Source: Octopus sinensis
Taxonomy: Eukaryota
Reading direction: 5' to 3'
Assembly (NCBI RefSeq): GCF_006345805.1
Contig: NC_043011.1
Location: 39,072,464 to 39,136,463 of the forward strand
DNA: 64,000 nucleotides
The notes beneath the pieces are model-generated. The model searched no databases and was not told the origin of the DNA. It saw only the letters and a program-made list of their open reading frames with translations. A program made the position numbers and the translations under genes. Position 1 is the stretch's first letter. The number at the start of each line of letters is the position of its first letter. Shown in pieces: positions 5,144 to 62,405 of the stretch.

Positions 5144-5364
5144 CATACATATGTGCACATGAATACGTGTGTGTGTGTGTGTATTAATCAAAGGTAAAAA
5201 AACGTGCTATCATTATACAGACACACACACACAGACCTGCATACATGCACATATCCATACATACACTCACATACTTCCTTCTCTTGCACTCTCCTGTCTT
5301 TGAAAGAATTTCCTCACCCATTCCCTTCCAGTCATTCAATATGTGACTGCGTGTGTATCGTTGG

Positions 5365-5543
5365 CGATTTTTTTTTTTACCGCCGTCTTCCTTTCCTTGG
5401 TTCTTTCCTTTTCCTATGTTTCTGACGAAGAGCTCTGCTCGAAACGTTAAATCCTCCTTCTTTCCTTTCCTGAGCGTCCAATAACACTATACTTGTTCCA
5501 CGTCCTCGCGTTGTGTTTTCTCTTTGTGTTTTCATGTTTGGAT

Positions 5544-5548
<5 letters not shown>
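5365..5548 (+). mobile_element. Penelope-like terminal-repeat fragment with minimal hammerhead (family A, copy 1)
   Basis: UUU CUGACGA A GAGC UCU GCUC GAAA CGUU AAA at 5419-5451 has an intact core, a 4-bp stem II and a palindromic ACGU stem III. The fragment ends directly in (TA)n and has a second copy at 9400-9582. Confidence 0.7.
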
Positions 5549-5579
<31 letters not shown>

Positions 5580-5690: not shown

Positions 5691-7450
5691 TCAATGCTGA
5701 ATCCTTGCCAACAATTAATTTATATATATATTAGGCACAGGAGTAACTGAGTGCTAAGAAGTTTGCTTTTGAACCACATGGTTCCAGGTTCAGTCCCATT
5801 GTGTGACATTTTGGGCTTGTGGTTGGAGCTGGTGGACAGAAACTGAAAGAAGCATGTTGTGTTTGTGTGTATATGTGTTTGAGTTTGTTCCCTCCATTAC
5901 TTGACAACCGGTATTGGTGTTTCAGGATGGCTGCATCCTAAAGGATGGAACTGGTAAAAACTAAGTGATAAAATATATAGAATACATGTGTGTGTGTGTG
6001 GAATATATATGTATATATTTAAATGAGGTTATTAACCCCCATGAAAGATCATGGGGGTCTTATGGCAAATCGAATCGATAATTTTAACATTGCATGGTGG
6101 AGTGGGGTGTCTGATAAGTTCTGAATCATGTTTGCCGTCTCTCTCCCGAGCAGACTATTAATATCTGTTACAAATCATGCTGCACGGCATGCAATATAGA
6201 TTCCACAGCAAGCGCGTGGAGGGAAATTACACAAAACGCCATACAGCATGTGAATTAACTAGAGAATCGTTTTTAACCTTGCTCTACATTTCTTTCCCTC
6301 CTTTCTTTGCCCTTCCACTCTCTCCCCCCCTCCCACTTTCTTTCACCTTCACTCTCACACTTGCCCCTCCCACACTACTCTCTCTTGCTATATCTCATAC
6401 TTCTTCACTACAGTCTCTCTGGTGGCTCACAAGGTCTGATGGAGTACATTAACTGGTATTACTGTCATCGCTTCATAAAGCACTTGTTTTTCTTTCCTCT
6501 TTTTCTTTTTGTGTAGTTTTGTTCCAACAACTTGTTTGCTTGTAACCTCCACACACCATCATTTCCTCTTCATATTATTATAAATTTTATTATTATTACT
6601 ACTACTACTACTACTAGTGTTGTTGTTGTTATTATTACATTAGGAATTTTCCTCTGGAAATTCATTTCCAAATTCTTCGACGTTTCTGGCTTATAATCTT
6701 ATCATCTGTAAAATTGTTCCACCAAGTTGAAGAATTGCACTGCAATTCTCCAGACATTCTAGCAGTTTATGATCCAATTTAAAACAGTTCCCAGTCACCA
6801 TCACCTCCACCCCCACCTGCCCCTGCTGCTGGTTCTCCCCCTCCCCTATTGTGTAGTTTAATTCTTTTTATTAACTTTTTTTTTTCTTATTTCACACCTC
6901 TGGTTTTATGAATTTTTTTTATTGTTCTGACTTTTTGTTTTTGTTGCTGCAGAAAAAAAAAAAAACCCAAAAACTCTTGTCAGGTTATTGTTAAGGTTGT
7001 TTATCATTAGGACAGTTGTTCTCGATCAAGCAGACCTATAACCAAAACCCATTCCTACCAATGACCATCCAGTCTTATTTGCAGGAAGACCACACTTCAA
7101 ATGAGTGACGGAAATCAGCATAGAGTGTATTTGTATGTTATGTATGGTGGTTGATATTGTAGCTCTGACATGGGGCCTTCTTTCTGTCTGTTCCAACTAG
7201 CAATAAACATGTTTACTAATCATACCTGGTTACACAAAGTTTTACCTGTTCTATGTTAAACCTGGCCAGATCCAGCTTCTCATACCTACCCTACAATGTC
7301 ATTCCCAATATAAACAATCGTATCTTCAAAGTCATGATGATATAAACTAATGCAAGATTAATTCAAAACAATGTGAATAAATAAGAATTATATTCGACTA
7401 AGTAATTTGAAAGCTAAAGGGTTAAAGTTTTTTGTTCTTAAATCGAAATA

Positions 7451-7858
7451 AGGAGTGACTGTGTGGTAAGTAGCTTGCTCACCAACCACATGGTTCCGGG
7501 TTCATTCCCACTGTGTGGCACCTTGGGCAAGTGTCTTCTACTATAGCTTCGGGCTGATCAAAGCCTTGTGAGTAGATTTGGTAGACGGAAACTGAAAGAA
7601 GCCAATCGTATATGTATATATATGTGTGTGTGTATGTTCGTGCGTTTGTGTTTGTCCCCATCCAACATCACTTGACAACTGATGCTGGCGTGTTTGCGTT
7701 CCCGTAACGTTAGCGGTTTGGCAAAAGTGACCGATAGAATAAGTACTAGGCTTACAAAGAATAAGTCCTGGGGTCGATTTGCTCAACTAAAGGTGGTGCT
7801 CCAGCACAGCTGCAGTCAAATGACTGAAACAAGCAAAAGTGTAAAAGAGTAAAGAGTA
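7451..7858 (+). mobile_element. SINE S1, near full length
   Basis: Same head, core and tail as 4843-5143. Confidence 0.85.
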
Positions 7859-8109
7859 TACCTACCGTCCTGAGTTTAACTAAATTTGTTCAAACCCTTT
7901 AACATTTAACCTTTTAAGCCAGGGCTGTGGAGTCGAAACAAAAGACTCTGACTCCTCTACTATTGGCACCTCTGACTCTGACTTCTCTTTATGTAATTAA
8001 GTGATTGTGGTCTACATATCTCATAAAGCTTATGTATATGCTTGTCCTTTGAGTAGGCCTATATCTTATAACTGGTTTATATTAAATAATAAAGATGTTG
8101 TGAGTCGGT

Positions 8110-8480
8110 GGAAGCACTCCGTCGGTTACGACGACGAGGGTTCCGGTTGATCCGAATCAACGGAACAGCCGGCTCGTGAAATTAACGTGTAATGTGGCTG
8201 AGCACTCCACAGACACGTGTACCCTTAACTTAGTTCTCAGGGATATTCAGCGTGACACAGAGAGTGACAAGGCCGGCCCTTTGAAATACAGGTACAACGG
8301 AAACAGGAAGTAAGAGTGAGAGAAAGTTGTGGTGAAAGAGTACAGCAGGGATCACCACCATCCCCTTCCGGAGCCTCGTGGAGCTTTAGGTGTTTTCGCT
8401 CAATAAACACTCACAATGCCCGGTCTGGGAATCGAAACCGCGAGTCCGCTGCCCTAACCACTGGGCCATTGCGCCTCCAC
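8110..8480 (-). mobile_element. Full-length tRNA-derived SINE (family S2) with 11-bp TSD
   Basis: tRNA-like head with A box (TGGCCCAGTGGTTAGG) and B box (GGTTTCGATTCC) on the minus strand. TSD TGTGAGTCGGT at 8099-8109 and 8481-8491. Confidence 0.9.
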
Positions 8481-9312: not shown

Positions 9313-9399
9313 GTGTGTGTGTGTGTATATATGTGTGTGTGTGGTGTGTGTGTATATATGTGTGTGTATATATATATATGTGTATGTATGTATATCATT

Positions 9400-9582
9400 G
9401 GTGATTTTCTTTCTCCATCTTCCCTTCCTTGGACCTTTCCTTTTTCTGTGTTTCTGACAAAGGGCTCCGCTCGAAACGTTAAATCCTCCTTCTTCCCTTT
9501 CCTGAGCGTCCAATAACACTATACTTGTTCCACGTCCTCGCGTTGTTGTGATTTCTCTTTGTTCATGTTTGGAGTAACTGTA
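9400..9582 (+). mobile_element. Penelope-like fragment (family A, copy 2), hammerhead core mutated
   Basis: Colinear with 5365-5548. The core reads CUGACAA (G8 to A) AGGGC UCC GCUC GAAA CGUU. It ends in (TA)n and sits within the central microsatellite of a SINE. Confidence 0.7.
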
Positions 9583-9584
9583 TA

Positions 9585-10490
9585 ATATATATATATATAT
9601 TATATATATATATATATATTGTGTGTGTGTAATATATATGTGTGGTGTGTATATATATGTGTGTGTGTGTATATATATGTGTGTGTGTGTATATATATGT
9701 GTGTGTGTGTATATAATGTGTGTATATATATGTGTGTGTGTGTGTATATATATGTGTGTGTGTGTGTATATATATGTGTGTGTGTGTATAATATATGTTG
9801 TGGTGTGTATATATATGTGTGTGTGTGTATAAGTGTGTGTGGTATATATATGTGTGTGTGTGTATATATAGTGTGTGTGTGTATATTATGGTGTGTGTGT
9901 GTATAATATATGGGTGTGTGTGTGGTAATAATATGTGTGGTTGTGTGTATATATATATGTGTGTGTGTGTGTGTGTATTATATGTGGTGTGTGTTGTGTG
10001 TGTATATATATATATGTGTGTGTGTGTGTATAGTGTGTGTGTGGTGTGTGTGTATATATATATGTGTGTGTGTGTGTGTATATATATGTGTGGTGTGTAT
10101 ATATATGTGTGTGTGGTATATATATATGTGTGTGTGTGTATATATATGTGTGTGTGTGGTTGTATATATGTGGTGTGTGTGGTGTTTGTATATATATGTT
10201 GTGTGTTGTGTGTATATATATGTGTGTGTGGTGGGTATATATGTGTGTGTGTGTATATATATGTGTGTGTGTGGTGTATATATGTGTGTGTGTGTATATA
10301 TATGTGTGTGTGGTATATATAATGTGTGGGTGTGGTATATATATGTGTGTGTATATATATTGTGTGTGTGTGTATATATATGTGGTGTGTGTGTATATAT
10401 TAGTGTGTGTTTTGTGTGGGTGATATGTGTGTGTGTGTGTGTGGTGTGTATATATATGTGTGTGTGTGTATATATATAATGTGTGTGTGT
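9585..10490. repeat. Compound (TG)n/(TA)n microsatellite
   Basis: Read directly; it produces the spurious V/C/Y/I ORFs in the track. Confidence 0.95.
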
Positions 10491-13211: not shown

Positions 13212-14245
13212 ATGTTTATTGAAATGGATAAATGAATTAGTGTTACGGATTATTCAGAATTTAACCGATACCTGGGTAGCAAAAATCACAACAGAAAAAA
13301 CACGGTTGAGGTTACGACCATGGGGTGTATATATATGAGGTAAGCAGAGTTAGCAGTTATAGTAACCGACTAAGGAATAAAATATCCGTATATACTATCG
13401 GTATCCGTTACCTGCTTTATCTGTGGGCATGGGTATGCAGGCACACAATGCTCGTAGGGTACAGGTAACAACAGAATAAACAAAAGTTTATCAGGGATCA
13501 AATATAAATAATCAGAAAATGGAGAAAAACTCAGAAAACCTCAGATCAACAAACAACACGATTGGACTACATCTAAAGCTTATTTAATACAAAACATGAC
13601 ATGGAAGCACTCTGTCGGTTACGACGAGGAGAGTTCCGGTTGATCCGAATCAACGGAACAGCCTGCTCGTGAAATTAACGTGTAAGTGGCTGAGCACTCC
13701 ACAGACACATGTACCCTTAACGTAGTTCTCGGGGACATTCAGCGTGACACAGAGAGTGACAAGGCCGGCCCTTTGAAATACAGGTACAACAGAAACAGGA
13801 AGTAAGAGTGAGAGAAAGTTGTGGTGAAAGAGTACAGCAGGGATCACCACCATCCCCTGCCGGAGCCTTGTGGAGCTTTAGGTGTTTTCGCTCAATAAAC
13901 ACTCACAACGCCCGGTCTGGGAATCGAAACCGCGATCCTATGACCGCGAGTCCGCTGCCCTAACCACTGGGCCATTGCGCCTCCTCGCAAAACATGACAT
14001 ACCGTACATGGGACATAGCAATTCTGAGGCCATTCAGTGCAGAGGTATTACAGAGAATACTACCTGTTGTCTGCAATGAGATAAGTGGTATTCTCTGTAA
14101 TATTTCTGCACTAATTGGCATTGGAAGCGGAAACAGCCGTAAGAACTGTTATGTCATATTTTGTATTAAATAAGCTTTAGATGTAGTCAGATTGTGTTGT
14201 TGGTTGATCTGAGGTTTTCTCCATTTTCTGATTATTTATATATTT
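13212..14245 (+). mobile_element. Penelope-like composite with inverted tail copy and decayed hammerhead, interrupted by a SINE
   Basis: Starts after (TA)n with sequence homologous to the minus strand of about 29850-29928. The segment 13500-13602 is the reverse complement of 14150-14245. An inner 24-bp hairpin lies at about 14037-14111, and GAAA C AGCC GUA AGAAC at 14130-14146. Confidence 0.55.
13603..13987 (-). mobile_element. Full-length SINE S2 with 13-bp TSD
   Basis: Near-identical to 8110-8480. TSD CAAAACATGACAT at 13590-13602 and 13988-14000. Confidence 0.9.
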
Positions 14246-14766
14246 ATATTTATTTCTTTGCAACGATCTCGAACCCACAAGAGTAAACGAGAGAGATAGA
14301 AACAGGCAGAAACAAGGAAAATACCACTTGTATTTGAACACTATGCAAATATTCTTTTGAAAAACTTTTCTTTCAATTTTCCCAAAATTTAATTTGTTTT
14401 TGCATACTTACAGTTGAAAAAGTCTCAATGACTGAAACCAGTACTAAAATGTTTTTTATAAAATTATTTTAGCATTTTCAAAATAATTGAAAAAGGAAAA
14501 TGAAGACCTAAAACTAGAGTTAGCAATAATATCGAAGAAGCTAGTCAAAGGTTTTTTCAGAACTGTGCAGAATGGCACAGGACAGACATGGGTGGAGGGC
14601 TGCAGCAGTTCAATTATTTGTATGTGTGTAAATGTATGTGTATACATTATATGATATACACATACATGGATATACATATATTTGTATGTGTATATATGTA
14701 ACTTTTACATGTGTGCATATATTATGTGTGTATCTCTCTTTCTGTGTGTGTGTGTGTGCGCGCATG

Positions 14767-14803
<37 letters not shown>

Positions 14804-15234
14804 GTATATAGTGTTAGAGAGAGTAAGAGAGGAAGTTGTAGCACTTGGAAGTTAATTGCAGGATCTACCTATTGAAATCTGGAAATAATAGCTGAGTTTA
14901 GAAACAGAAACACCTGTGGTGAATAATAAAAAGGTTGACTACAAACAAATACACACACACACACAAAATCACAAAATATCAATAAATGAATAACATTAAA
15001 GAAAGCAACCTATAAACACACAATGTATAATCGTTTTTTTTTTTTTAGATAGACTTGTTCTATTTTATAGAGATAGTTTGTGTGATACTCGGAACTCATC
15101 ACAGACTTGGCTTTCATAGGTCTAGGCATGGCTGCATGGCTTAGGAGCTCACTTTCTAGCCACATGGTTTTCGGTCTAGATCCTTCATGTAGCAGTTTGG
15201 GAAAGTGAATGTTAATGAGATTAATCCCTGCTAT

Positions 15235-15624
15235 GTGGAGGCGCAATGGCCCAGTGGTTAGGGCAGCGGACTCGCGTCATAGGATCGCGGTTTCGATTCC
15301 CGACCGGGCGTTGTGAGTGTTTATTGAGCGAAAACACCTAAAAGCTCCAGACGCTCCGGCAGGGATGGTGGTGATCCCTGCTGTACTCTTCATCCACCAC
15401 AACTTTCTCTCACTCTACTTCTGTTTCTGTTGTACCTGTATTTCAAGGGGCCGGCCTTGTCACTCTCTGTGTCACGCTGAATATCCCCGAGAACTACGTT
15501 AAGGGTGCACGTGTCTGTGGAGTGCTCAGCCACTTACACTTAATTTCACGAGCAGGCTGTTCCGTTGATTCGGATCAACTGGAACCCTCATCGTCGTAAC
15601 CGACGGAGTGCTTTCACTTCCTAA
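15235..15624 (+). mobile_element. Full-length SINE S2 with 12-bp TSD
   Basis: Same family on the plus strand. TSD AATCCCTGCTAT at 15223-15234 and 15625-15636. Confidence 0.9.
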
Positions 15625-15630
15625 AATCCC

Positions 15631-15720
15631 TGCTATCTCCAGCACCGAGACCACTAGATCATGTGATTTCGACTTTCCTGTGTCTCATCAGTAATGGACT
15701 TTCGGCCGCTAGAGATAGCA
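15631..15720 (-). ncRNA. Extended type I hammerhead ribozyme, apparently intact
   Basis: Minus-strand RNA reads UGCUAUCUCUAGC G GCCGA AAGU CCAUUA CUGAUGA GAC ACAGGAAA GUC GAAA UCACAUGA UC UAGUGG UC UCGGU GCUGGAGAUAGCA. Core CUGAUGA (15691-15685) and GAAA (15670-15667) are intact. Stem II is GAC/GUC with an 8-nt loop; stem III is AUC/GAU with an ACAU loop. The AUC cleavage triplet has C17 at 15657. Stem I is 6+5+13 bp with an internal loop. Confidence 0.9.
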
Positions 15721-16204
15721 GCAGTTCATCTCCTTTTCAGTGATATATAGAAAACCATGTCTAAAAGGGGTCTTTATCCTTTTTTTACACTTCTAGTTAT
15801 GGGATTTTGTGCCTGAAATATATAAAAGTTACTCAACTTCCCTTTTCATGTGGTTAGAAGCTCTCCTTAGTTTTCGTTATTTTACTTGAAGGCATGAGGT
15901 TCCAGTTTTGATGGTCTTGCGATGTATGTTGTGCTCGTCTGTTTTTACAATCTAACCCATGCCAACATGGAAAGCGGACGTTAAACGATGATGAGTTGAT
16001 GCTACTTTTCTGAACGAGAGCAATTAGGTCGAAAGGATGCATGAAATAAAGGGTACAGCCTTGCATTGCACTGAATAAAGCCTCCCTCTAATTCAATGTG
16101 CCAGCCTGCTTGCGTCCTATATCTCTGATTGGTTTCATTGTAGAATCCTGTTAAGAACACAAAATGACTGTGACGTTACTGAGTCATTATTTATGCAACA
16201 ATTT

Positions 16205-16490
16205 GAGTAGGTGAAGCTGAAATACTCAGCATTGATTGGATAATTGAAATTACTCATTGTTGACTGGATGACTGAAACTCCTGTTGGTCGGCCATCTGAG
16301 ACATTCATTGCTGATTGGACAACGGAGACTCTGGTTGTTTGGATAACTTAGATACTCATCTATGATTTGATAACTAGAATACTGATGACTTGAGTACTCA
16401 GCATTCATTAGATGACCGAAAGACTCAATTTTGATTGGATATTGGATAACTGGAATATCGAACACTCAGCTTTGATTGAATAACTGGAAT
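16205..16490. repeat. Degenerate short-period minisatellite
   Basis: Recurring TACTCAGCATTGATTGGATAACTGRAAT-like units, continuing near 16915-16950 beyond a SINE insertion. Confidence 0.65.
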
Positions 16491-16902
16491 TACTCTTTTA
16501 CTCTTTTACTTGTTTCAGTCAGTTGACTGCGGCCATGCTGGAGCATTGCCTTTAGTCGAGCAAATCGACCCCAGGACTTATTCTTTGTAAGCCTAGTACT
16601 TATTCTATCGGTATATTTTGCCGAACCGCTAAGTTACGGGGACATAAACACACCAGCATCAATTGTCAAGCGATGTTGGGGGGACAAACACAGACACACA
16701 AACATACACACAGACACACACAAACATATATACATATACATATATACGATGGGCTTCTTTCAGTTTCCGTCTACCAAATCCACTCACAAGGCTTTGGTCG
16801 GCCCGAGGCTTTAGTAGAAGACACTTGACCAAGGTGCCACGCAGTGGGACTGAACCCGGAACCATGTCGTTGGTAAGCAAGCTACTTACAACACAGCCAC
16901 TC
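16490..16902 (-). mobile_element. SINE S1, near full length
   Basis: Reverse complement of the S1 consensus seen elsewhere in the window. Confidence 0.85.
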
Positions 16903-17717
16903 TTTTTTTTGGGGGGGCTAACTGAACTACTCATTGATTGGCTAACTGCAGTATAAATTATTGAAGCTGATGGAGACTCGTTTTTACTAAATTTGTGTAT
17001 ATTAACGAGCTCAGTGTCGACGGTTGATTTCTCCCAGCGCGAATAGGATTTCAGTTAAGTGATTTCACTCGTGAATGTGTCAGCTTGTATGTGTATGTAT
17101 ATGTGTGTGTTTATATGTACAGGTGTGTGTGTGTATTCTTTTTGATGGTAGAACTCAAATTAGCTGAAGCTATAAATAATGGTATGAAGAAAATTGAGTT
17201 AGAAAACCCTTTGGATGGAAAACATTCATATATATTATGCATTTATTTGCATCTATCTATCTATCAATATAGATGTGTGTGTGTGTCTGTATATATATAT
17301 ATATATAAAAACATATGTTCATACATGTATGTATATGTATATATGTTTATACACACACACACACACACACAAATGTACTTATATGTAGGTGTGTGTGCAC
17401 ACGTATATAAATAAACATGACAAATTGGTTAAAATAGCTTCTGTTGGTTCTTCTACCACCAACCAACCAACAAACCAACCAACCAACCATCCCTCCATCC
17501 ATCTATCCACCCACCCACCCACCCACTCACCATAGTTGGTGGTCAAGTCTGCAGTTCCGCTATGTTGCATTTCAGTTCTTCAGCCACCGAGCTTCACTGA
17601 CGAACTGAAAAACTGTACACGTGCCTGTGTGTGTGTGCGTGCGTGCGTGTGTATCTGTATTTAAGCACATACTTGCCTCTGTCTATTTATGTGTGAGTGC
17701 TGAGTTTCCGCGCGTGC

Positions 17718-17757
<40 letters not shown>

Positions 17758-18559
17758 TTGATTTTATGTATTCGCACGTGTGGCTGTATGCGTATGCGTG
17801 TGTGTGTGTATGTAAGTGATAAGTGATACAACCTAATAAATCTATATCATAGATCTGCTAAGTGAAGCTGACTGGCACAGGAGCGTTGGCGGAGATGATG
17901 GCATTGGTCATAGGGATACTACTACTACTACTAGTAGTAGTATTAGTAGGGATAGTAAAAAAAAAAAAGCAACAAAACGAAACATCAAAATATAAAAAAT
18001 AAAACAAAAAAAAAACAAAGCTTATATCAATTCCATTAGTACCTAAGGCTATTTTTTTTTATTATCCCAGCCTTTCATTTCTGTAGACTTACTCTGTTTT
18101 TATTATATTATTATTATTATTATTATTTATTTTCATTTTGTTATTGCACAGCGTGATGTCATCTGCTTGGAGGAAACTAGTAATGGTGGCATTAGCTGAT
18201 GATGATGATAGTCATGATGATGGTTGTTGTTTTGATGGTGATGTTGATGGTGGTGGTGGTGGTGGTGATGCTTGTGTGAGTCTGTGACATTGGTTGGTAT
18301 AAAGGCAGCGAGAGGAGAGAACCAATAACAGGAATTACAATGGAAAGTCTTTGGGAAATTGAGAGCCAATGTGGAAGCGTGGAGATGTGTGTGTGTGTGT
18401 GTGTGCGCATGCAGGTGTATCTGTATGTGTGTATGCATATATATATATAGATGTGTACGTGAATGTACACTTTCACATGTATATACATTAAGAGATACAT
18501 ACACACATACACAGATGCACACACTCATAGGATATGTGTAGGTCTCCATGCATCAGTGC

Positions 18560-35784: not shown

Positions 35785-35945
35785 TTAGGAGTGGCTGTGT
35801 GGTAAGTAGCTTGCTTATGAGCCACATGATTCCAGGTTCTGTTCCACTGCATGGCACCTTGGGCAAGTGTCTTTGTACTATAGCCTCGGGCTGACCAAAG
35901 CCTCGTGAGTGGATTTGGTAGATGGGAACTGAAGGAAGCCTGTCG

Positions 35946-35988
<43 letters not shown>

Positions 35989-36195
35989 GTGTATATGGTG
36001 TGTCTGTGTTTGTCCCCTCAAAATTGCTTGACAACCGATGCTGGTGTGTTTACGTCCCTGTAACTTACCGGTTTGGCAAAAGAGACCAATAGAATAAGTA
36101 CTAGGCTTACAAGGAATAAGTCTTGGGGTCGATTTGCTCGACTAAAGGCAGTGCTCCAGCATGGCCACAATCAAATGACTGAAACAAATAAAAAA
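35785..36195 (+). mobile_element. SINE S1
   Basis: S1 head, core, microsatellite and tail. Confidence 0.8.
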
Positions 36196-36205
36196 GAGAG
36201 AATTA

Positions 36206-48764: not shown

Positions 48765-49075
48765 GGAAGGCGTAGTGGTTAGGTATTCAGGTTATGCTCA
48801 TTAGCTCATGAGTTCAATCCACAGTGGCTCATTGTGTCCTTAAGCAAGTCACTTCAGTTCACATTGCTCCAGGTGACTCAGCTGGCAAAAATGAGTTGTA
48901 ACGGTATTTCAAAGGGCCAGCCTTGCCGCACTCTGTGTCATGCTGAATCTCCATGCAAACTACGTTAAGGGTACACCTGTTTGTGGAGTGCTCAGCCACT
49001 TGCATGTTACTTTTATGAGCAGGCTGTTCCATTGGTTGGATCAACAGGACCCCGTGTTTCGTAACCAGCTGAGTG
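48765..49075 (+). mobile_element. Chimeric SINE: S4-like head with S2 tail
   Basis: Head and core resemble 29088-29220; the 3' half matches the S2 segment TTTCAAAGGGCC...GAGCAGGCTGTTCC. Confidence 0.6.
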
Positions 49076-49108
49076 CAAAGAAAATGTGTGTGTGTGTATA
49101 TATGTATA

Positions 49109-52250: not shown

Positions 52251-53194
52251 GCATATATATCTATATCTACATACATGCAGGCATATATCTATCTATCTAT
52301 ATATAATATATATATATATATATATACACACAAACACACACAACACACAAACACGTGTGTGTTAATATATGTACATGAGTATCTACTTGTACATACTTGT
52401 GTGTCTATGTGTACACACACACACATATTTATAAAGTGTTTATTTGTTTCCACTTGTCATTAAACTTCTTTTATATATAGTCAAAGAGTTTCAGTTACAA
52501 TGGTTCTACTATTAGTGTGTATAAGTGGTTATATAGTGTCTTGTATCCAAATTGGGTATTTATTTATTTATTTACCTGTGATTCAGTACTTTACTTTAAA
52601 AGCAGTAATTAGAAGGAGAAAATGGTAATTACATTGGTGAAGGAAAAAATCAAAAAAAATGTTCCCCCATTTCACCCCCCTCTCCCACCCCACCACCATC
52701 AGTGCCATCACCACCACCACCACCACCACCACCACCATCATCAGTACTGTTACCTCCCAGTGCCATCATCACCATTGCTACCATCAGCACCATCCACCAC
52801 CACCAACACCCACAACCTCCATCACTTTATCAATAAAAGAAGAAACAAAAGAAGAGCAATAAGTACTTGTCAAGTGATTGAGAGGAATATGGCCACCATA
52901 AAAATTTGGTTTTGGTGAGGAGGGGGGGCGCCCTACCCCTCCATTCAAAAATATAAAGGAATAATAAAACTCTCCTCCCCCCACCTGTCTCCATGAAAAG
53001 CCAATACAACATTGCTTTTATTTTATGTTTTATTATTTTTTTTTTGTTTTGTTTGGTTTTGCACTTCAAGCTACTTCTCATCTACCTCATCAATGTTTCA
53101 GTACATGCCCATCCTTTTATTATTTTTTTTTCAGGCATAGTGTATTTGGGACTATATTATCTAATGTGTTTATCATATTTTTACATTTAATCTC

Positions 53195-53615
53195 TTTTAC
53201 ATGTTTCAGTCATTTGACTGCGGCCATGCTGGAGCACCGCCTTTAGTCGAGCAAATCGACCCCAGGTCTTATTCTTTGGAAGCCTAGTACTTATTCTATC
53301 AGTCTCATTTGCTATCGGTTTCTTTTGCTGAACCGCTAGGTTACGGGGATGTAAACACACCACCATCGGTTGTCAAACGATGTTGGGGGAACAAACACAG
53401 ACACACAAACATATACACACACATACATGTATATATTCATATATACGACGGACTTCCTTTCAGTTTCCGTCTACCAAATCCACTCACAAGGCTTTGGTCG
53501 GTCCGAGGCTATAGTAGAAGACACTTGCCCAAGGTGCCATGCAATGGGAATGAACCAGGAACCATGTGGTTGGTAAGCAAGCTACTTACCACACAGCCAC
53601 TCCTGTGCCTAAATA
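53195..53615 (-). mobile_element. SINE S1
   Basis: S1 sequence on the minus strand. Confidence 0.85.
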
Positions 53616-55134
53616 GTTAGTGGGTTGTTTTTTCTTTTTTTTTCTTATTTTGGGGCTGTGTTTCTTTTAATATTTTTGTTTCTCCATTCCACCAAGGTCA
53701 ACTTTGCTTTCATCCTTTCTGGGTCAATAAATTAAGTGCCTGTAGTGTACTGGTGTCAATCTAATCGACTGCCCCCACCTCCCCCAAAATTTTGGGTCTT
53801 GTACCTAGAGTAGAAAAGAATATTTTTGTTCCCCCCACTGCACAAGCAGCTCAGACATCCAATTTAAACAATACAGAATACTGCAACACTGGCAAGGGAT
53901 CCTCCTAGAAATGGTCAAACGTCGTACTAGAATGTAATAACAGCTGCTAGGTCTCCCTCACATTATACAATCTGTGTGTGATTTTGTTCCCTTTTTCAGT
54001 CTACGAGGCTTTTACATAATATTTTGTGATCTATTATTTATAGCTACGATTGCATTTACACATCTCTTGTAGTATTGTGTTTTCAAATTTCTCAAGGTTT
54101 CAAAACAAAATCTGCCCCAGCATGGCCACAGCTCATGAGCTGAATCTAGAATCAATCAATCAATCAATACATAAACATCCTTCCTTGTCAGTAAAATTAG
54201 CACTTCCAACTTAGCAAATGAAAACCAGTAAGGCTTTCTGGTGTAGTGGTATCATGTCCTTCCACAAAGTTGTGGTTCTATTCCCGTTGGTGACTGTTCG
54301 GGTTTTTATTTTTCTGTTTAATGGTCTTTATCCTGATCAGTATTACCATCATCGTTGTTTTAGCATCCACTGTTCCATGTTTCCATGGGTTGAACAGAAT
54401 TCTTTGGAACAGTTTTTTTTTTTCTCTGGCTTGATACCCTTCCTGTTGTCAATCCTCACCTGTTTCCAAGTCAGATAATATCTCCCCCCCCGTGGCTTGA
54501 TATATTTTCATGGAAAATTTGTATGATGGGAGCACTTGTCTACTACTATCACACAATGTTGTGATAAGGAAGCACACAAACCTTAATGTATGTACAATAA
54601 CAACATGAACAAGAATAGGCAATATTACATCTTTATTTGATTATTACACCATACAGCACTGATGATCATGTCTATTGTGTCAGTATATTTAGATACAGGA
54701 AAAAGGTACAATCTATCCAAAATTTATAGCAACACGATGTTATCAAGGTTAGATGTGAAGGGGCCACATCCCCAGAAATATGGCATATACACTCATTACC
54801 CACTTTTGTCTTCGATCTCATTGCTTAGGAATTGTTGTAGCAAAAATCGGTGCTGGCAATAAGTTCTATAGAATATCTGTGGAAATAACCATAACAAAAT
54901 GCCATAGCCTATGTTGTAACATCCGTGGATCACAGACTCTCTGGTTAAGGACCCAACCCGGCCTAAACGTGAAAAACTTGTGTAATTTTGATAGAGGCAT
55001 GAGTGGCTGTGTGGTATGTAGCTTGCTTCCCAACCACATGGTTCCGGGTTCAGTCCCTCTGTGTGGCAGCTTGGGCGGGTGTCTTCTTGTGAGTAGATTT
55101 AGTAGACGGAAACTGAAAGAAGACCGTTGTGTGA

Positions 55135-56206: not shown

Positions 56207-56446
56207 TATAATAATAAATATTAGGGAATAAATCCAAATTTACAGGGAAAAAATCAGATTTAGGATTAAATCCAATTTTATAGTAAAATATTATATAATA
56301 TTAGAGACAAAACCACTATTTTGCAAAACAAACAAGGAAAGACTTAATCAATACATAAAATTTTTATTTTTTACTTTCTATTAAAATTTTATGTATTGAT
56401 TAAGTCTTTCCTTGTTTGTTTTGCAAAATAGTGGTTTTGTCTCTAA

Positions 56447-56504: not shown

Positions 56505-56710
56505 TACTCTTTTACTTGTTTCAGTCATTGACTGTGGCCATGCTGGAGCACCGCCTTTAGTCGATCACATCGACCCCAGGACTTATTCTTTGTAAGTCTA
56601 GTACTTATTCTATCGGTCTCTTTTGCCGAACCGCTATGTTACGGGGACGTAACCACACCACCATCGGTTGTCAAGCGATGTTGGGGGGGACAAACACAAA
56701 CACAAAAACC

Positions 56711-56753
<43 letters not shown>

Positions 56754-56935
56754 TATATGCACACATATATACGATGGGCTTATTTCAGTTTCCATCTACC
56801 AAATCCACTCACAAGGCTTTGGTCAGCCCGAGGCTATAGTAGGAGACACTTGCCCAAGGTGCCACGCAGTGGGAATGCACCCGGAACCATGAGGTTGGCA
56901 AGCAAGCTACTTACCACATAGCCTCTCCTACGCCT
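56505..56935 (-). mobile_element. SINE S1
   Basis: S1 sequence on the minus strand. Confidence 0.85.
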
Positions 56936-61964: not shown

Positions 61965-62187
61965 TACTCTCTTTACTCTTTTACTCGTTTCAGTCATTTG
62001 ACTGCGGCCATGCTGCAACACTGCCTTTAGTCGAGCAAATCAACCCCAGGACTTATTCTTTGTAAGCCTAGTACTTATTCTATTGGTCTCTTTTGCCGAA
62101 CCACTAAGTTACGGGTACGTAAACACACTAGCATCGGTTGTCAAGCGATGTTGGGAGGAGACAAACACAGTGTATATGTTTATATAC

Positions 62188-62234
<47 letters not shown>

Positions 62235-62405
62235 CACACATGTATATGATGGGCTTCCTTCAGTTTCCGTCTACGAAATCCACTCACAAGGCTTTGGTCG
62301 GCCCAAAGCTATAGTAGAAGACACTTGCCCAAGGTGCCACACTGTGGGAATGAACCCGGAACCATGTGGTTGGTAAGCAAGCTACTTACCACACAGCCAC
62401 TCCCG
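61965..62405 (-). mobile_element. SINE S1. Further partial copies near 5732, 8987, 19460, 21967, 33760, 36480, 45875, 47820, 54995 and 63530
   Basis: S1 sequence on the minus strand; the partial copies share the head or tail motifs. Confidence 0.8.

What the first reader, a model, noticed from the sequence alone, without database searches (positions are those of the whole stretch)
15631..15720. Apparently intact, extended type I hammerhead ribozyme outside any recognisable retroelement context
Seen: on the minus strand all core nucleotides are present (CUGAUGA, GAAA, AUC cleavage triplet; predicted cut between 15657 and 15656). Stem II has an A-rich 8-nt loop and stem III is 3 bp. Stem I is 6+5+13 bp with an AAGU/UC internal loop, and its few non-Watson-Crick pairs are G-U. 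Established: natural high-activity type I HHRs (Schistosoma Smalpha, amniote intronic HH9/HH10, metazoan retrozymes) have a long stem I whose bulge docks on loop II, whereas Penelope-type HHRs are minimal and dimeric. Inference: this is either a domesticated, possibly intronic self-cleaving RNA or a monomer of an undescribed cephalopod retrozyme/circRNA family. It lacks the (TA)n-terminated tail seen on most other HHRs here and has no second copy in the window.
Basis: partly seen in the sequence, partly recalled or inferred. Interest (0 to 1): 0.92.

Follow-up and report, generated by a model that had tools for sequence, protein, structure and literature searches.

The report
Solitary complete hammerhead ribozyme motif
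A complete, textbook-shaped self-cutting RNA motif (type I hammerhead ribozyme) lies on the minus strand in repeat-rich non-coding DNA, and it is most likely a lone leftover of a ribozyme-carrying mobile element, which makes it a new example of a well-known kind.

Summary
On the minus strand, 15720->15631 carries every invariant hammerhead nucleotide. Stem II is 3 bp with an 8-nt loop and stem III is 3 bp. Stem I is 6+5+13 bp (27 Watson-Crick and 3 G-U pairs over the three stems, no mismatches). The predicted cut lies between C15657 and U15656. It is not a chance match: the basic motif is expected 0.003 times per shuffled window, and the stem I extension scores z = -5.8. Rfam does not call it (best hit Hammerhead_HH9, 23.2 bits, against a threshold of 52).

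A young tRNA-derived SINE sits at the motif's 3' edge between 12-bp target-site duplications, so the motif is older than that insertion. An old SINE head lies 21 nt beyond it on the opposite strand. There is no RT or endonuclease coding sequence, no tandem partner, and no second copy in the window.

I could reach no genome or transcriptome of the source organism, so copy number, conservation and expression are untested.

The most likely reading is a solitary relic of a hammerhead-bearing retroelement (non-LTR retrozyme or Penelope lineage) that may still be able to cleave. Domestication is not excluded but has no support. Interest is about 0.3.

The parts
15631..15720 (-). Whole hammerhead hairpin (type I; 90 nt)
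   Evidence: Direct reading. The MFE fold keeps stems I and II; -37.6 kcal/mol, z = -4.75. Hammerhead_HH9 alignment, 23.2 bits. Only descriptor hit in the window.
15708..15720 (-). Stem I, outer 13-bp segment, 5' strand (pairs with 15631-15643); one G-U pair at 15711/15640
15707..15707 (-). Single bulged G between the 13-bp and 5-bp segments of stem I
15702..15706 (-). Stem I, middle 5-bp segment, 5' strand (pairs with 15644-15648); G-U pair at 15706/15644
15698..15701 (-). Internal loop of stem I, 5' side AAGU (3' side UC at 15649-15650); candidate docking site for loop II
   Evidence: It aligns with the UUAC/UAC loop of the HH9 model. Docking itself is inferred.
15692..15697 (-). Stem I, proximal 6-bp segment, 5' strand CCAUUA (pairs with UAGUGG at 15651-15656); G-U pair at 15694/15654
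15685..15691 (-). Catalytic core C3-A9 (CUGAUGA)
15671..15684 (-). Stem-loop II: GAC/GUC, 3 bp (G10.1-C11.1 present), loop ACAGGAAA; 14 nt in all, as in the HH9 model
15668..15670 (-). Core G12 A13 A14
15658..15667 (-). Stem-loop III: A15.1-U-C / G-A-U16.1, 3 bp, loop ACAU
   Evidence: It is not in the MFE: the hammerhead-consistent fold is 3.8 kcal/mol above the MFE, against 5.5 for the HH9 consensus.
15656..15657 (-). Predicted cleavage site: after C17 (15657), before U1.1 (15656)
   Evidence: Follows from standard hammerhead numbering applied. Cleavage itself is not tested.
15235..15624 (+). tRNA-derived SINE inserted after the hammerhead formed. It is not part of the ribozyme; it dates it.
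   Evidence: Copies at 13602-13984 and 8108-8480 (inverted), 93-94% pairwise identity
15625..15636 (.). Target-site duplication AATCCCTGCTAT (second copy at 15223-15234). It overlaps the last 6 nt of the stem I 3' strand, so the insertion left the hairpin intact.
   Evidence: 12/12 identical (family D5); direct reading
15124..15207 (+). Old tRNA-like SINE head fragment, antisense to the hammerhead. It lies 21 nt from the hairpin once the young SINE is removed.
   Evidence: Local alignments to the consensus of the abundant SINE and to the copy at 63.6 kb

Best explanation
This is a genuine, structurally complete type I hammerhead ribozyme motif encoded on the minus strand. It is most likely a solitary copy left behind by a hammerhead-carrying non-autonomous retroelement, of the non-LTR retrozyme or Penelope-derived lineage that supplies most canonical type I hammerheads in animal genomes. 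It sits in SINE-rich and microsatellite-rich non-coding DNA and is older than the SINE that later landed at its 3' edge.

Mechanism, inferred from hammerhead chemistry and not tested here: if the minus strand is transcribed, stems I-III form around the 15-nt core. The AAGU/UC internal loop of stem I docks on loop II. The 2'-OH of C17 (15657) attacks its 3' phosphate. The products are a 5' fragment ending in a 2',3'-cyclic phosphate and a 3' fragment starting with 5'-OH U15656.

Stem I is 24 bp long, so the two products would stay annealed. The nick would therefore be readily re-ligated or would need unwinding. That geometry suits end-joining or circularisation better than product release.

I see no sign that the host uses it.
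For: Shown:
- All invariant nucleotides and three helices are present, with 30 standard pairs and no mismatch.
- It is the only hit in the window, against 0.0033 expected by chance.
- The stem I extension scores z = -5.8.
- Folding is strand-specific: -37.6 kcal/mol on the minus strand and -28.9 on the plus strand.
- It aligns end to end with Hammerhead_HH9, with matching helix and loop lengths.
- The energy gap to the catalytic fold (3.8 kcal/mol) is smaller than for the HH9 consensus (5.5).
- The SINE with a perfect 12-bp duplication post-dates the motif.
- The window has no coding sequence, and many SINEs and microsatellites.

From the literature:
- Canonical type I hammerheads in animals belong mostly to non-LTR retrozymes. 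Invertebrate ones have a 2-4 bp helix III and cleave as monomers.
- Solo monomers are common and evenly dispersed.
- Penelope elements and Rfam Hammerhead_1 hits are reported in cephalopod genomes.
- A Penelope-like (TA)n-tailed repeat occurs twice in this window.
Against: - There is no second copy, no tandem partner and no recognisable monomer boundary or target-site duplication around the hairpin.
- Pairing does not continue beyond the 90 nt as it would in a rod-like retrozyme RNA.
- No family consensus could be obtained, so homology to any retrozyme or Penelope pLTR is not shown.
- Rfam scores are below every hammerhead gathering threshold.
- Stems II and III are short and weak, and stem III is not in the MFE.
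Confidence: 0.55

Rival explanations
1. It is a domesticated host ribozyme. Like the amniote HH9/HH10 hammerheads, it would be kept by selection inside an intron or a long non-coding RNA to process that transcript.
For: The architecture is very close to HH9. The core and all 30 pairs are intact although the locus is older than a SINE that has since diverged by about 3%. All three non-Watson-Crick pairs are G-U.
Against: About 3% neutral divergence predicts only about 3 changes in 90 nt. That leaves roughly a 60% chance of an untouched 16-nt core, so intactness proves nothing (calculation). No exon or Pfam domain occurs anywhere in the window. T exceeds A on the plus strand in 15 of 16 bins. 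If that bias is transcription-coupled, the plus strand would be the sense strand and the hammerhead would be antisense (weak). There are no conservation data.
Confidence: 0.12
2. It is a living member of an undescribed, compact hammerhead repeat family (retrozyme-like or SINE-like) that is still transcribed. The 24-bp stem I would serve to bring the ends together for circularisation.
For: A long stem I is what end-joining by a tRNA ligase or by self-ligation would favour. The motif is intact. Penelope-type partners appear to exist in this genome.
Against: There is a single copy in 64 kb, whereas the other SINE families here have 3 to more than 12 copies. There is no tandem array and no rod-like extension.
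Confidence: 0.15
3. The hairpin belongs to the body of an old plus-strand tRNA-SINE whose head is at 15124-15207. The hammerhead would then be on the antisense strand of that element and would be a passenger with no role.
For: The tRNA-like head lies 21 nt upstream of the hairpin on the plus strand once the young SINE is removed. Head plus structured body is the normal SINE layout.
Against: The body shows no similarity to the abundant SINE beyond the head (score 10.5, against a shuffled mean of 12.3). No target-site duplication delimits such an element. None of the more than 15 related heads in the window is followed by this hairpin. A full hammerhead arising by accident on an antisense strand is very improbable.
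Confidence: 0.1
4. It is a chance resemblance: an ordinary inverted repeat whose loop happens to spell the hammerhead core.
For: Rfam does not reach threshold, and the HH9 E-value scaled to the whole window is about 0.3.
Against: The joint expectation is about 7e-7 per window: 0.0033 for the motif times 2e-4 for the stem extension. The G-U pairs make the structure specific to one strand.
Confidence: 0.03

Closest known systems
Hammerhead_HH9 (Rfam RF02275), intronic type I hammerheads of amniotes
   Same: Type I topology. 6-bp proximal helix I, asymmetric internal loop, 5-bp distal helix. 14-nt stem-loop II with a C-A...A-A loop pattern. 3-bp helix III. It aligns across all 77 model positions.
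   Different: The stem and loop sequences differ. The fourth stem II pair is an A-A mismatch. The score is 23.2 bits against a gathering score of 52. There is an extra 13-bp clamp on helix I. No intronic or conserved setting is shown.
Canonical type I hammerheads of metazoan non-LTR retrozymes (coral, mussel, axolotl; Cervera & de la Pena 2020, PMC7229834)
   Same: Complete core, 6-bp helix I next to the core, a helix III of a few base pairs closed by a tetraloop, low-GC non-coding repeat context, and no LTR/PBS/PPT. Solo monomers are known.
   Different: It is not in a tandem array, has no second copy in 64 kb, shows no rod-like pairing beyond the hairpin, and has no sequence similarity to the coral or mussel ribozymes beyond the core.
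Schistosoma Sm-alpha hammerhead (SINE-like repeat)
   Same: A type I hammerhead with an extended helix I whose bulge contacts loop II. It is associated with tRNA-promoter SINE-like repeats. It has high cleavage and ligation rates.
   Different: Here the neighbouring SINE pieces are either a later insertion or lie on the opposite strand. No sense-strand pol III boxes were found upstream of the ribozyme.
Minimal hammerheads of Penelope-like elements and Terminons
   Same: Type I, retroelement-borne and widespread in invertebrates. A Penelope-like (TA)n-tailed repeat is present in the same window.
   Different: Those lack helix III and the loop-loop contacts and act as dimers. This one has a 3-bp helix III, an internal loop in helix I, and no pLTR, RT or GIY-YIG nearby.
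Discontinuous hammerhead of mammalian Clec2 3' UTRs
   Same: A very long helix I.
   Different: That one is type III, with helix I closed by hundreds of nucleotides. This one is a compact 90-nt type I hairpin.

Membership tests
Hammerhead ribozyme (class) | Invariant core: C3 U4 G5 A6 N7 G8 A9, G12 A13 A14, A15.1-U16.1, H17 | tested here: met
   CUGAUGA at 15691-15685; GAA at 15670-15668; A15667 pairs with U15658; C17 = 15657
Hammerhead ribozyme (class) | Three helices radiating from the core, with G10.1-C11.1 closing helix II | tested here: met
   30 standard pairs and no mismatch. Stems I and II are in the MFE. Stem III appears only in the constrained fold, 3.8 kcal/mol above the MFE, which is less than for the HH9 consensus.
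Hammerhead ribozyme (class) | Reaches the curated Rfam gathering score of a hammerhead family | tested here: not met
   No hit at gathering thresholds. The best is HH9 at 23.2 bits against 52.
Hammerhead ribozyme (class) | Site-specific self-cleavage giving 2',3'-cyclic phosphate and 5'-OH ends | not testable with these tools
   Needs in vitro transcription or end-specific RNA-seq.
Hammerhead_HH9 / amniote intronic hammerheads | Conserved position in an intron of an orthologous gene across species | not testable with these tools
   No exon is recognisable in the window. No related genome was reachable.
Metazoan non-LTR retrozyme | Tandem repeats of about 150-450 bp, each carrying a type I hammerhead | tested here: not met
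   A single hammerhead, and no similar sequence elsewhere in the window. Only a solo-monomer status remains possible.
Metazoan non-LTR retrozyme | The monomer RNA folds into a highly self-paired rod and accumulates as circRNA | tested here: inconclusive
   Flank-to-flank pairing beyond the 90-nt hairpin is no more than in shuffled flanks. Expression is not testable.
Penelope-like element | RT plus GIY-YIG ORF and pseudo-LTRs carrying minimal hammerheads without helix III | tested here: not met
   No Pfam domain in the six-frame translation of 13300-18200 or in 77 ORFs across the rest of the window. This motif has a 3-bp helix III.
Sm-alpha-type SINE with hammerhead | tRNA-type pol III promoter upstream of the ribozyme, on the same strand | tested here: not met
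   The only adjacent tRNA-like head (15124-15207) is downstream and on the opposite strand. ARAGORN finds no tRNA.

The most novel reading that the evidence does not exclude
The 90-nt 'clamped' hammerhead is a cephalopod-lineage innovation. It would be either a host-retained ribozyme or the signature of an undescribed compact retrozyme or SINE family. Its 24-bp helix I would hold the cleavage products together, so that the ribozyme works as a reversible nick-and-ligate (circularisation) module rather than a simple cutter.
Probability: 0.1. Interest if true: 0.6.

Novelty: new member of a known kind. Interest (0 to 1): 0.3.

Why it matters
If the motif is active, it would be a canonical (not minimal) type I hammerhead from a lineage where, in the papers I could search, hammerheads appear only as counts from automated annotation. 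It would also point to retrozyme-type elements having been present there. Its unusually long helix I would make it a natural test case for how product retention shifts the balance between cleavage and ligation.

If it is a silent relic, which is the more likely case, it is an ordinary trace of retroelement activity. Its main use would be as a reminder that Rfam thresholds miss well-formed hammerheads that a motif descriptor finds.

Tried and rejected
- Rfam at gathering thresholds over the whole window gave nothing. The permissive whole-window scan was swamped by microsatellite 'miRNA' matches.
- Exact-pattern scans for the core with its stems found nothing: metagenome contigs (two patterns), GTDB genomes and IMG/VR all gave 0. 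These collections probably hold no DNA of the source organism.
- I tried to reach related DNA through spurious ORFs next to the motif. Two exact look-ups found nothing. One homology search with the ORF of the pre-insertion sequence also found nothing. It did not return even the window's own ORF, so the locus is not indexed and the negative result says nothing. I therefore did not spend the remaining large searches.
- Full-text search for the ribozyme sequence gave 0 papers.
- I tested whether the hairpin region is homologous to the body of the abundant SINE. It is not: score 10.5, below the shuffled mean of 12.3.
- I looked for target-site duplications around a larger element: after the minus-strand poly(A) at 15044-15032, and upstream of the old SINE head. 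None was convincing.
- I tested for rod-like pairing of the flanks. It was no better than with shuffled flanks.
- An alternative fold that sequesters the core (UGAU pairing with AUCA) is the MFE. I rejected it as a refutation because the proven HH9 consensus shows a larger gap between the MFE and the catalytic fold.
- ARAGORN found no tRNA.
- The paper on HH9 (PMC2933863) is not held.

Full report
**1. What is in the sequence**

The minus strand from 15720 to 15631 reads UGCUAUCUCUAGC-G-GCCGA-AAGU-CCAUUA-CUGAUGA-GAC(ACAGGAAA)GUC-GAA-AUC(ACAU)GAU-C|UAGUGG-UC-UCGGU-GCUGGAGAUAGCA.

- Every invariant hammerhead position is present: C3-A9, G12-A14, the A15.1-U16.1 pair, the G10.1-C11.1 pair and C17.
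- Helix I is open-ended, so this is a type I hammerhead.
- Stem I has 6 + 5 + 13 bp. An AAGU/UC internal loop separates the first two segments.
- A script counted 27 Watson-Crick and 3 G-U pairs and no mismatch.

**2. Is it more than chance?**

- A descriptor requiring the core, stem I of at least 5 bp and stems II and III of at least 3 bp finds only this site on either strand. It finds 0.0033 sites per dinucleotide-shuffled window.
- With the inner 47 nt kept and only the outer arms of stem I shuffled, the observed energy is reached once in 5000 trials (z = -5.8).
- The joint expectation is therefore below 1e-6 per window.
- The 90-mer folds to -37.6 kcal/mol (z = -4.75) on the minus strand and to -28.9 kcal/mol on the plus strand. 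That asymmetry is what three G-U pairs predict.

Rfam is less kind.

- Nothing in the window reaches a gathering score.
- In a local permissive scan the best match is Hammerhead_HH9 at 23.2 bits, against a threshold of 52. E = 0.0011 for 241 nt, which scales to about 0.3 for the whole window.
- That alignment is still informative. It runs across all 77 model positions and matches the 6-bp proximal helix I, the internal loop, the 5-bp distal helix, a 14-nt stem-loop II and a 3-bp helix III.

**3. The alternative fold**

- The MFE does replace the weak stem III with a 4-bp UGAU/AUCA helix.
- The hammerhead-consistent structure is 3.8 kcal/mol less stable in the nearest-neighbour model.
- The same calculation on the Rfam HH9 consensus, taken, gives a gap of 5.5 kcal/mol. 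HH9 is reported in the literature as a self-cleaving ribozyme (my own knowledge; I could not read the paper).
- Such models ignore the junction and the loop-loop contacts. This is therefore not a refutation.

**4. Surroundings**

The window has 37% GC and is full of (TA)n/(TG)n microsatellites and SINEs.

- *No coding sequence.* No Pfam domain was found in the ten longest ORFs, in a six-frame translation of 13300-18200, or in the 77 longest non-repetitive ORFs outside that stretch. There is no RT or GIY-YIG endonuclease near the motif, and no recognisable exon.
- *A young SINE at the 3' edge.*
  - A ~390-bp tRNA-derived SINE on the plus strand (15235-15624) lies immediately 3' of the hairpin.
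  - It has sister copies at 13602-13984 and 8108-8480, with 93-94% pairwise identity.
  - It is flanked by a perfect 12-bp duplication, AATCCCTGCTAT, at 15223-15234 and 15625-15636.
  - The duplication overlaps the last six bases of stem I, so the insertion copied that end of the stem and did not break it.
  - The hammerhead is therefore older than this insertion.
- *What intactness does and does not show.* The SINE copies are each about 3% from their common ancestor. A neutral 90-nt element of that age would have collected about three substitutions. The chance that none of them hits the 16 critical core positions is about 0.6. Intactness is therefore not evidence of selection.
- *An old SINE head.* With the SINE removed, the hairpin is followed after 21 nt by an old tRNA-like SINE head (15124-15207) on the opposite strand. 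It is 62-74% identical to the heads of the abundant ~450-nt SINE, which has at least 12 copies in the window. The similarity stops at the end of the head. The hairpin region is not related to that SINE's body.
- *A poly(A) run.* A 13-nt poly(A) run on the minus strand (15044-15032) lies about 210 nt downstream of the cut site. I found no matching target-site duplication, and none around the old head either.
- *No rod and no second copy.* Pairing between the flanks does not continue beyond the 90-nt hairpin any more than in shuffled flanks. BLAST with word size 7 finds no second copy of the hairpin or of its immediate upstream 230 nt.

**5. The 'other HHRs'**

The only other hammerhead-like cores belong to a ~190-nt repeat at about 5335-5560 and 9385-9600.

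- The repeat is inserted in microsatellites and ends in (TA)n.
- Its core reads CUGACGA-A-GAGC(UCU)GCUC-GAAAC-GU. It has an extra A before stem II and only an ACGU in place of helix III.
- In the second copy G8 is mutated.
- It looks like a tail of a Penelope-like element. It is not a canonical hammerhead by my descriptor, and Rfam gives it no match.

**6. Related sequences**

I could not reach any.

- Pattern scans of metagenome, prokaryotic-genome and viral collections gave nothing.
- Exact and homology look-ups through neighbouring ORFs gave nothing.
- The homology search did not return even the window's own ORF, so this negative result carries no weight.
- Copy number, orthology and expression therefore remain untested.
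- I could not verify the organism.

**7. What is known**

- Canonical type I hammerheads, with a 6-bp helix I, loop-loop contacts and a short helix III, are widespread in animals. Most are found in non-LTR retrozymes: tandem repeats of 150-450 bp expressed as small linear and circular RNAs.
- Invertebrate versions usually cleave well as monomers.
- The coral and mussel ribozymes printed in that paper's supplement have the same layout as this motif but no sequence similarity beyond the core.
- Solo monomers are frequent and evenly dispersed along chromosomes, and retrozymes appear to derive from Penelope pLTRs.
- Penelope elements and 235 Rfam Hammerhead_1 loci are reported in a giant squid genome.
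- Amniote intronic hammerheads are thought to be domesticated copies of such elements.
- The Schistosoma ribozyme shows that natural tertiary contacts raise ligation as well as cleavage.

**8. Interpretation**

The motif is real. My best reading (confidence 0.55) is that it is a solitary relic of a hammerhead-bearing non-autonomous retroelement. It may still be able to cleave and is not evidently used by the host.

The chemistry is standard and is inferred, not shown. C17 2'-OH attacks its phosphate, with the cut at 15657|15656.

The distinctive feature is the 24-bp stem I. It would hold the products together and favour re-ligation or end-joining.

Rival readings:

| Reading | Confidence |
|---|---|
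| A living compact repeat family | 0.15 |
| Domestication by the host | 0.12 |
| Antisense passenger of a plus-strand SINE | 0.10 |
| Chance | 0.03 |

**9. Verdict**

- Novelty: a new member of a known kind.
- Interest is about 0.3, because specialists expect such motifs in invertebrate genomes and nothing here yet sets it apart except the long clamp.
- A genome-wide search and a cleavage assay would settle the question quickly.

Noticed in passing
window 5335-5560 and 9385-9600 (+): A ~190-nt repeat inserted in (TG)n/(TA)n microsatellites and ending in (TA)n. It carries a Penelope-type minimal hammerhead-like core: CTGACGA-A-GAGCtctGCTC-GAAAC-GT. In the second copy the core is mutated to CTGACAA. 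It is not canonical and has no Rfam match.
   Followed up: partly
window, e.g. 53192-53620, 56505-56935, 61965-62400, 7450-7852 (-), 35786-36196 (-), 16491-16899: An abundant ~450-nt tRNA-derived SINE with at least 12 copies in 64 kb. It has an internal microsatellite and a (TAAAAGAG)n-like tail.
   Followed up: partly
window 15235-15624 (+), 13602-13984 (-), 8108-8480 (-), partial 48895-49076: A second tRNA-derived SINE family of ~385 nt. The copies are 93-94% identical, so they are fairly young. The copy at 15235 has a perfect 12-bp target-site duplication.
   Followed up: yes
whole window, 4-kb bins: T exceeds A on the plus strand in 15 of 16 bins, and G slightly exceeds C overall. If this is a transcription-coupled bias, the plus strand is the sense strand of a long transcription unit. 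The hammerhead would then be antisense to it.
   Followed up: no
window 15032-15044 (minus strand): A 13-nt poly(A) run about 210 nt downstream of the hammerhead cut site, counted with the SINE removed. It could be the tail of a retroposed minus-strand element, but no target-site duplication was found.
   Followed up: partly
window 16217-16483: Seven degenerate copies of a ~27-nt unit (CTGAAATACTCAGCATTGATTGGATAA-like) spaced 27-51 nt apart, about 500 nt upstream of the hammerhead on the minus strand. Nature unknown.
   Followed up: no
window 15951-16012 and at least 10 other sites: A ~55-nt motif (TCATCGTTTAACGTCCGCTTTCCATGTTGGCATGGGTTAG-like) recurs throughout the window. It is presumably the end of another dispersed repeat.
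   Followed up: no
window 56314-56433 (+): A 120-nt near-perfect hairpin that scores 60 bits against Rfam mir-2513 (threshold 89). It is AT-rich and is probably an inverted repeat rather than a microRNA gene.
   Followed up: no
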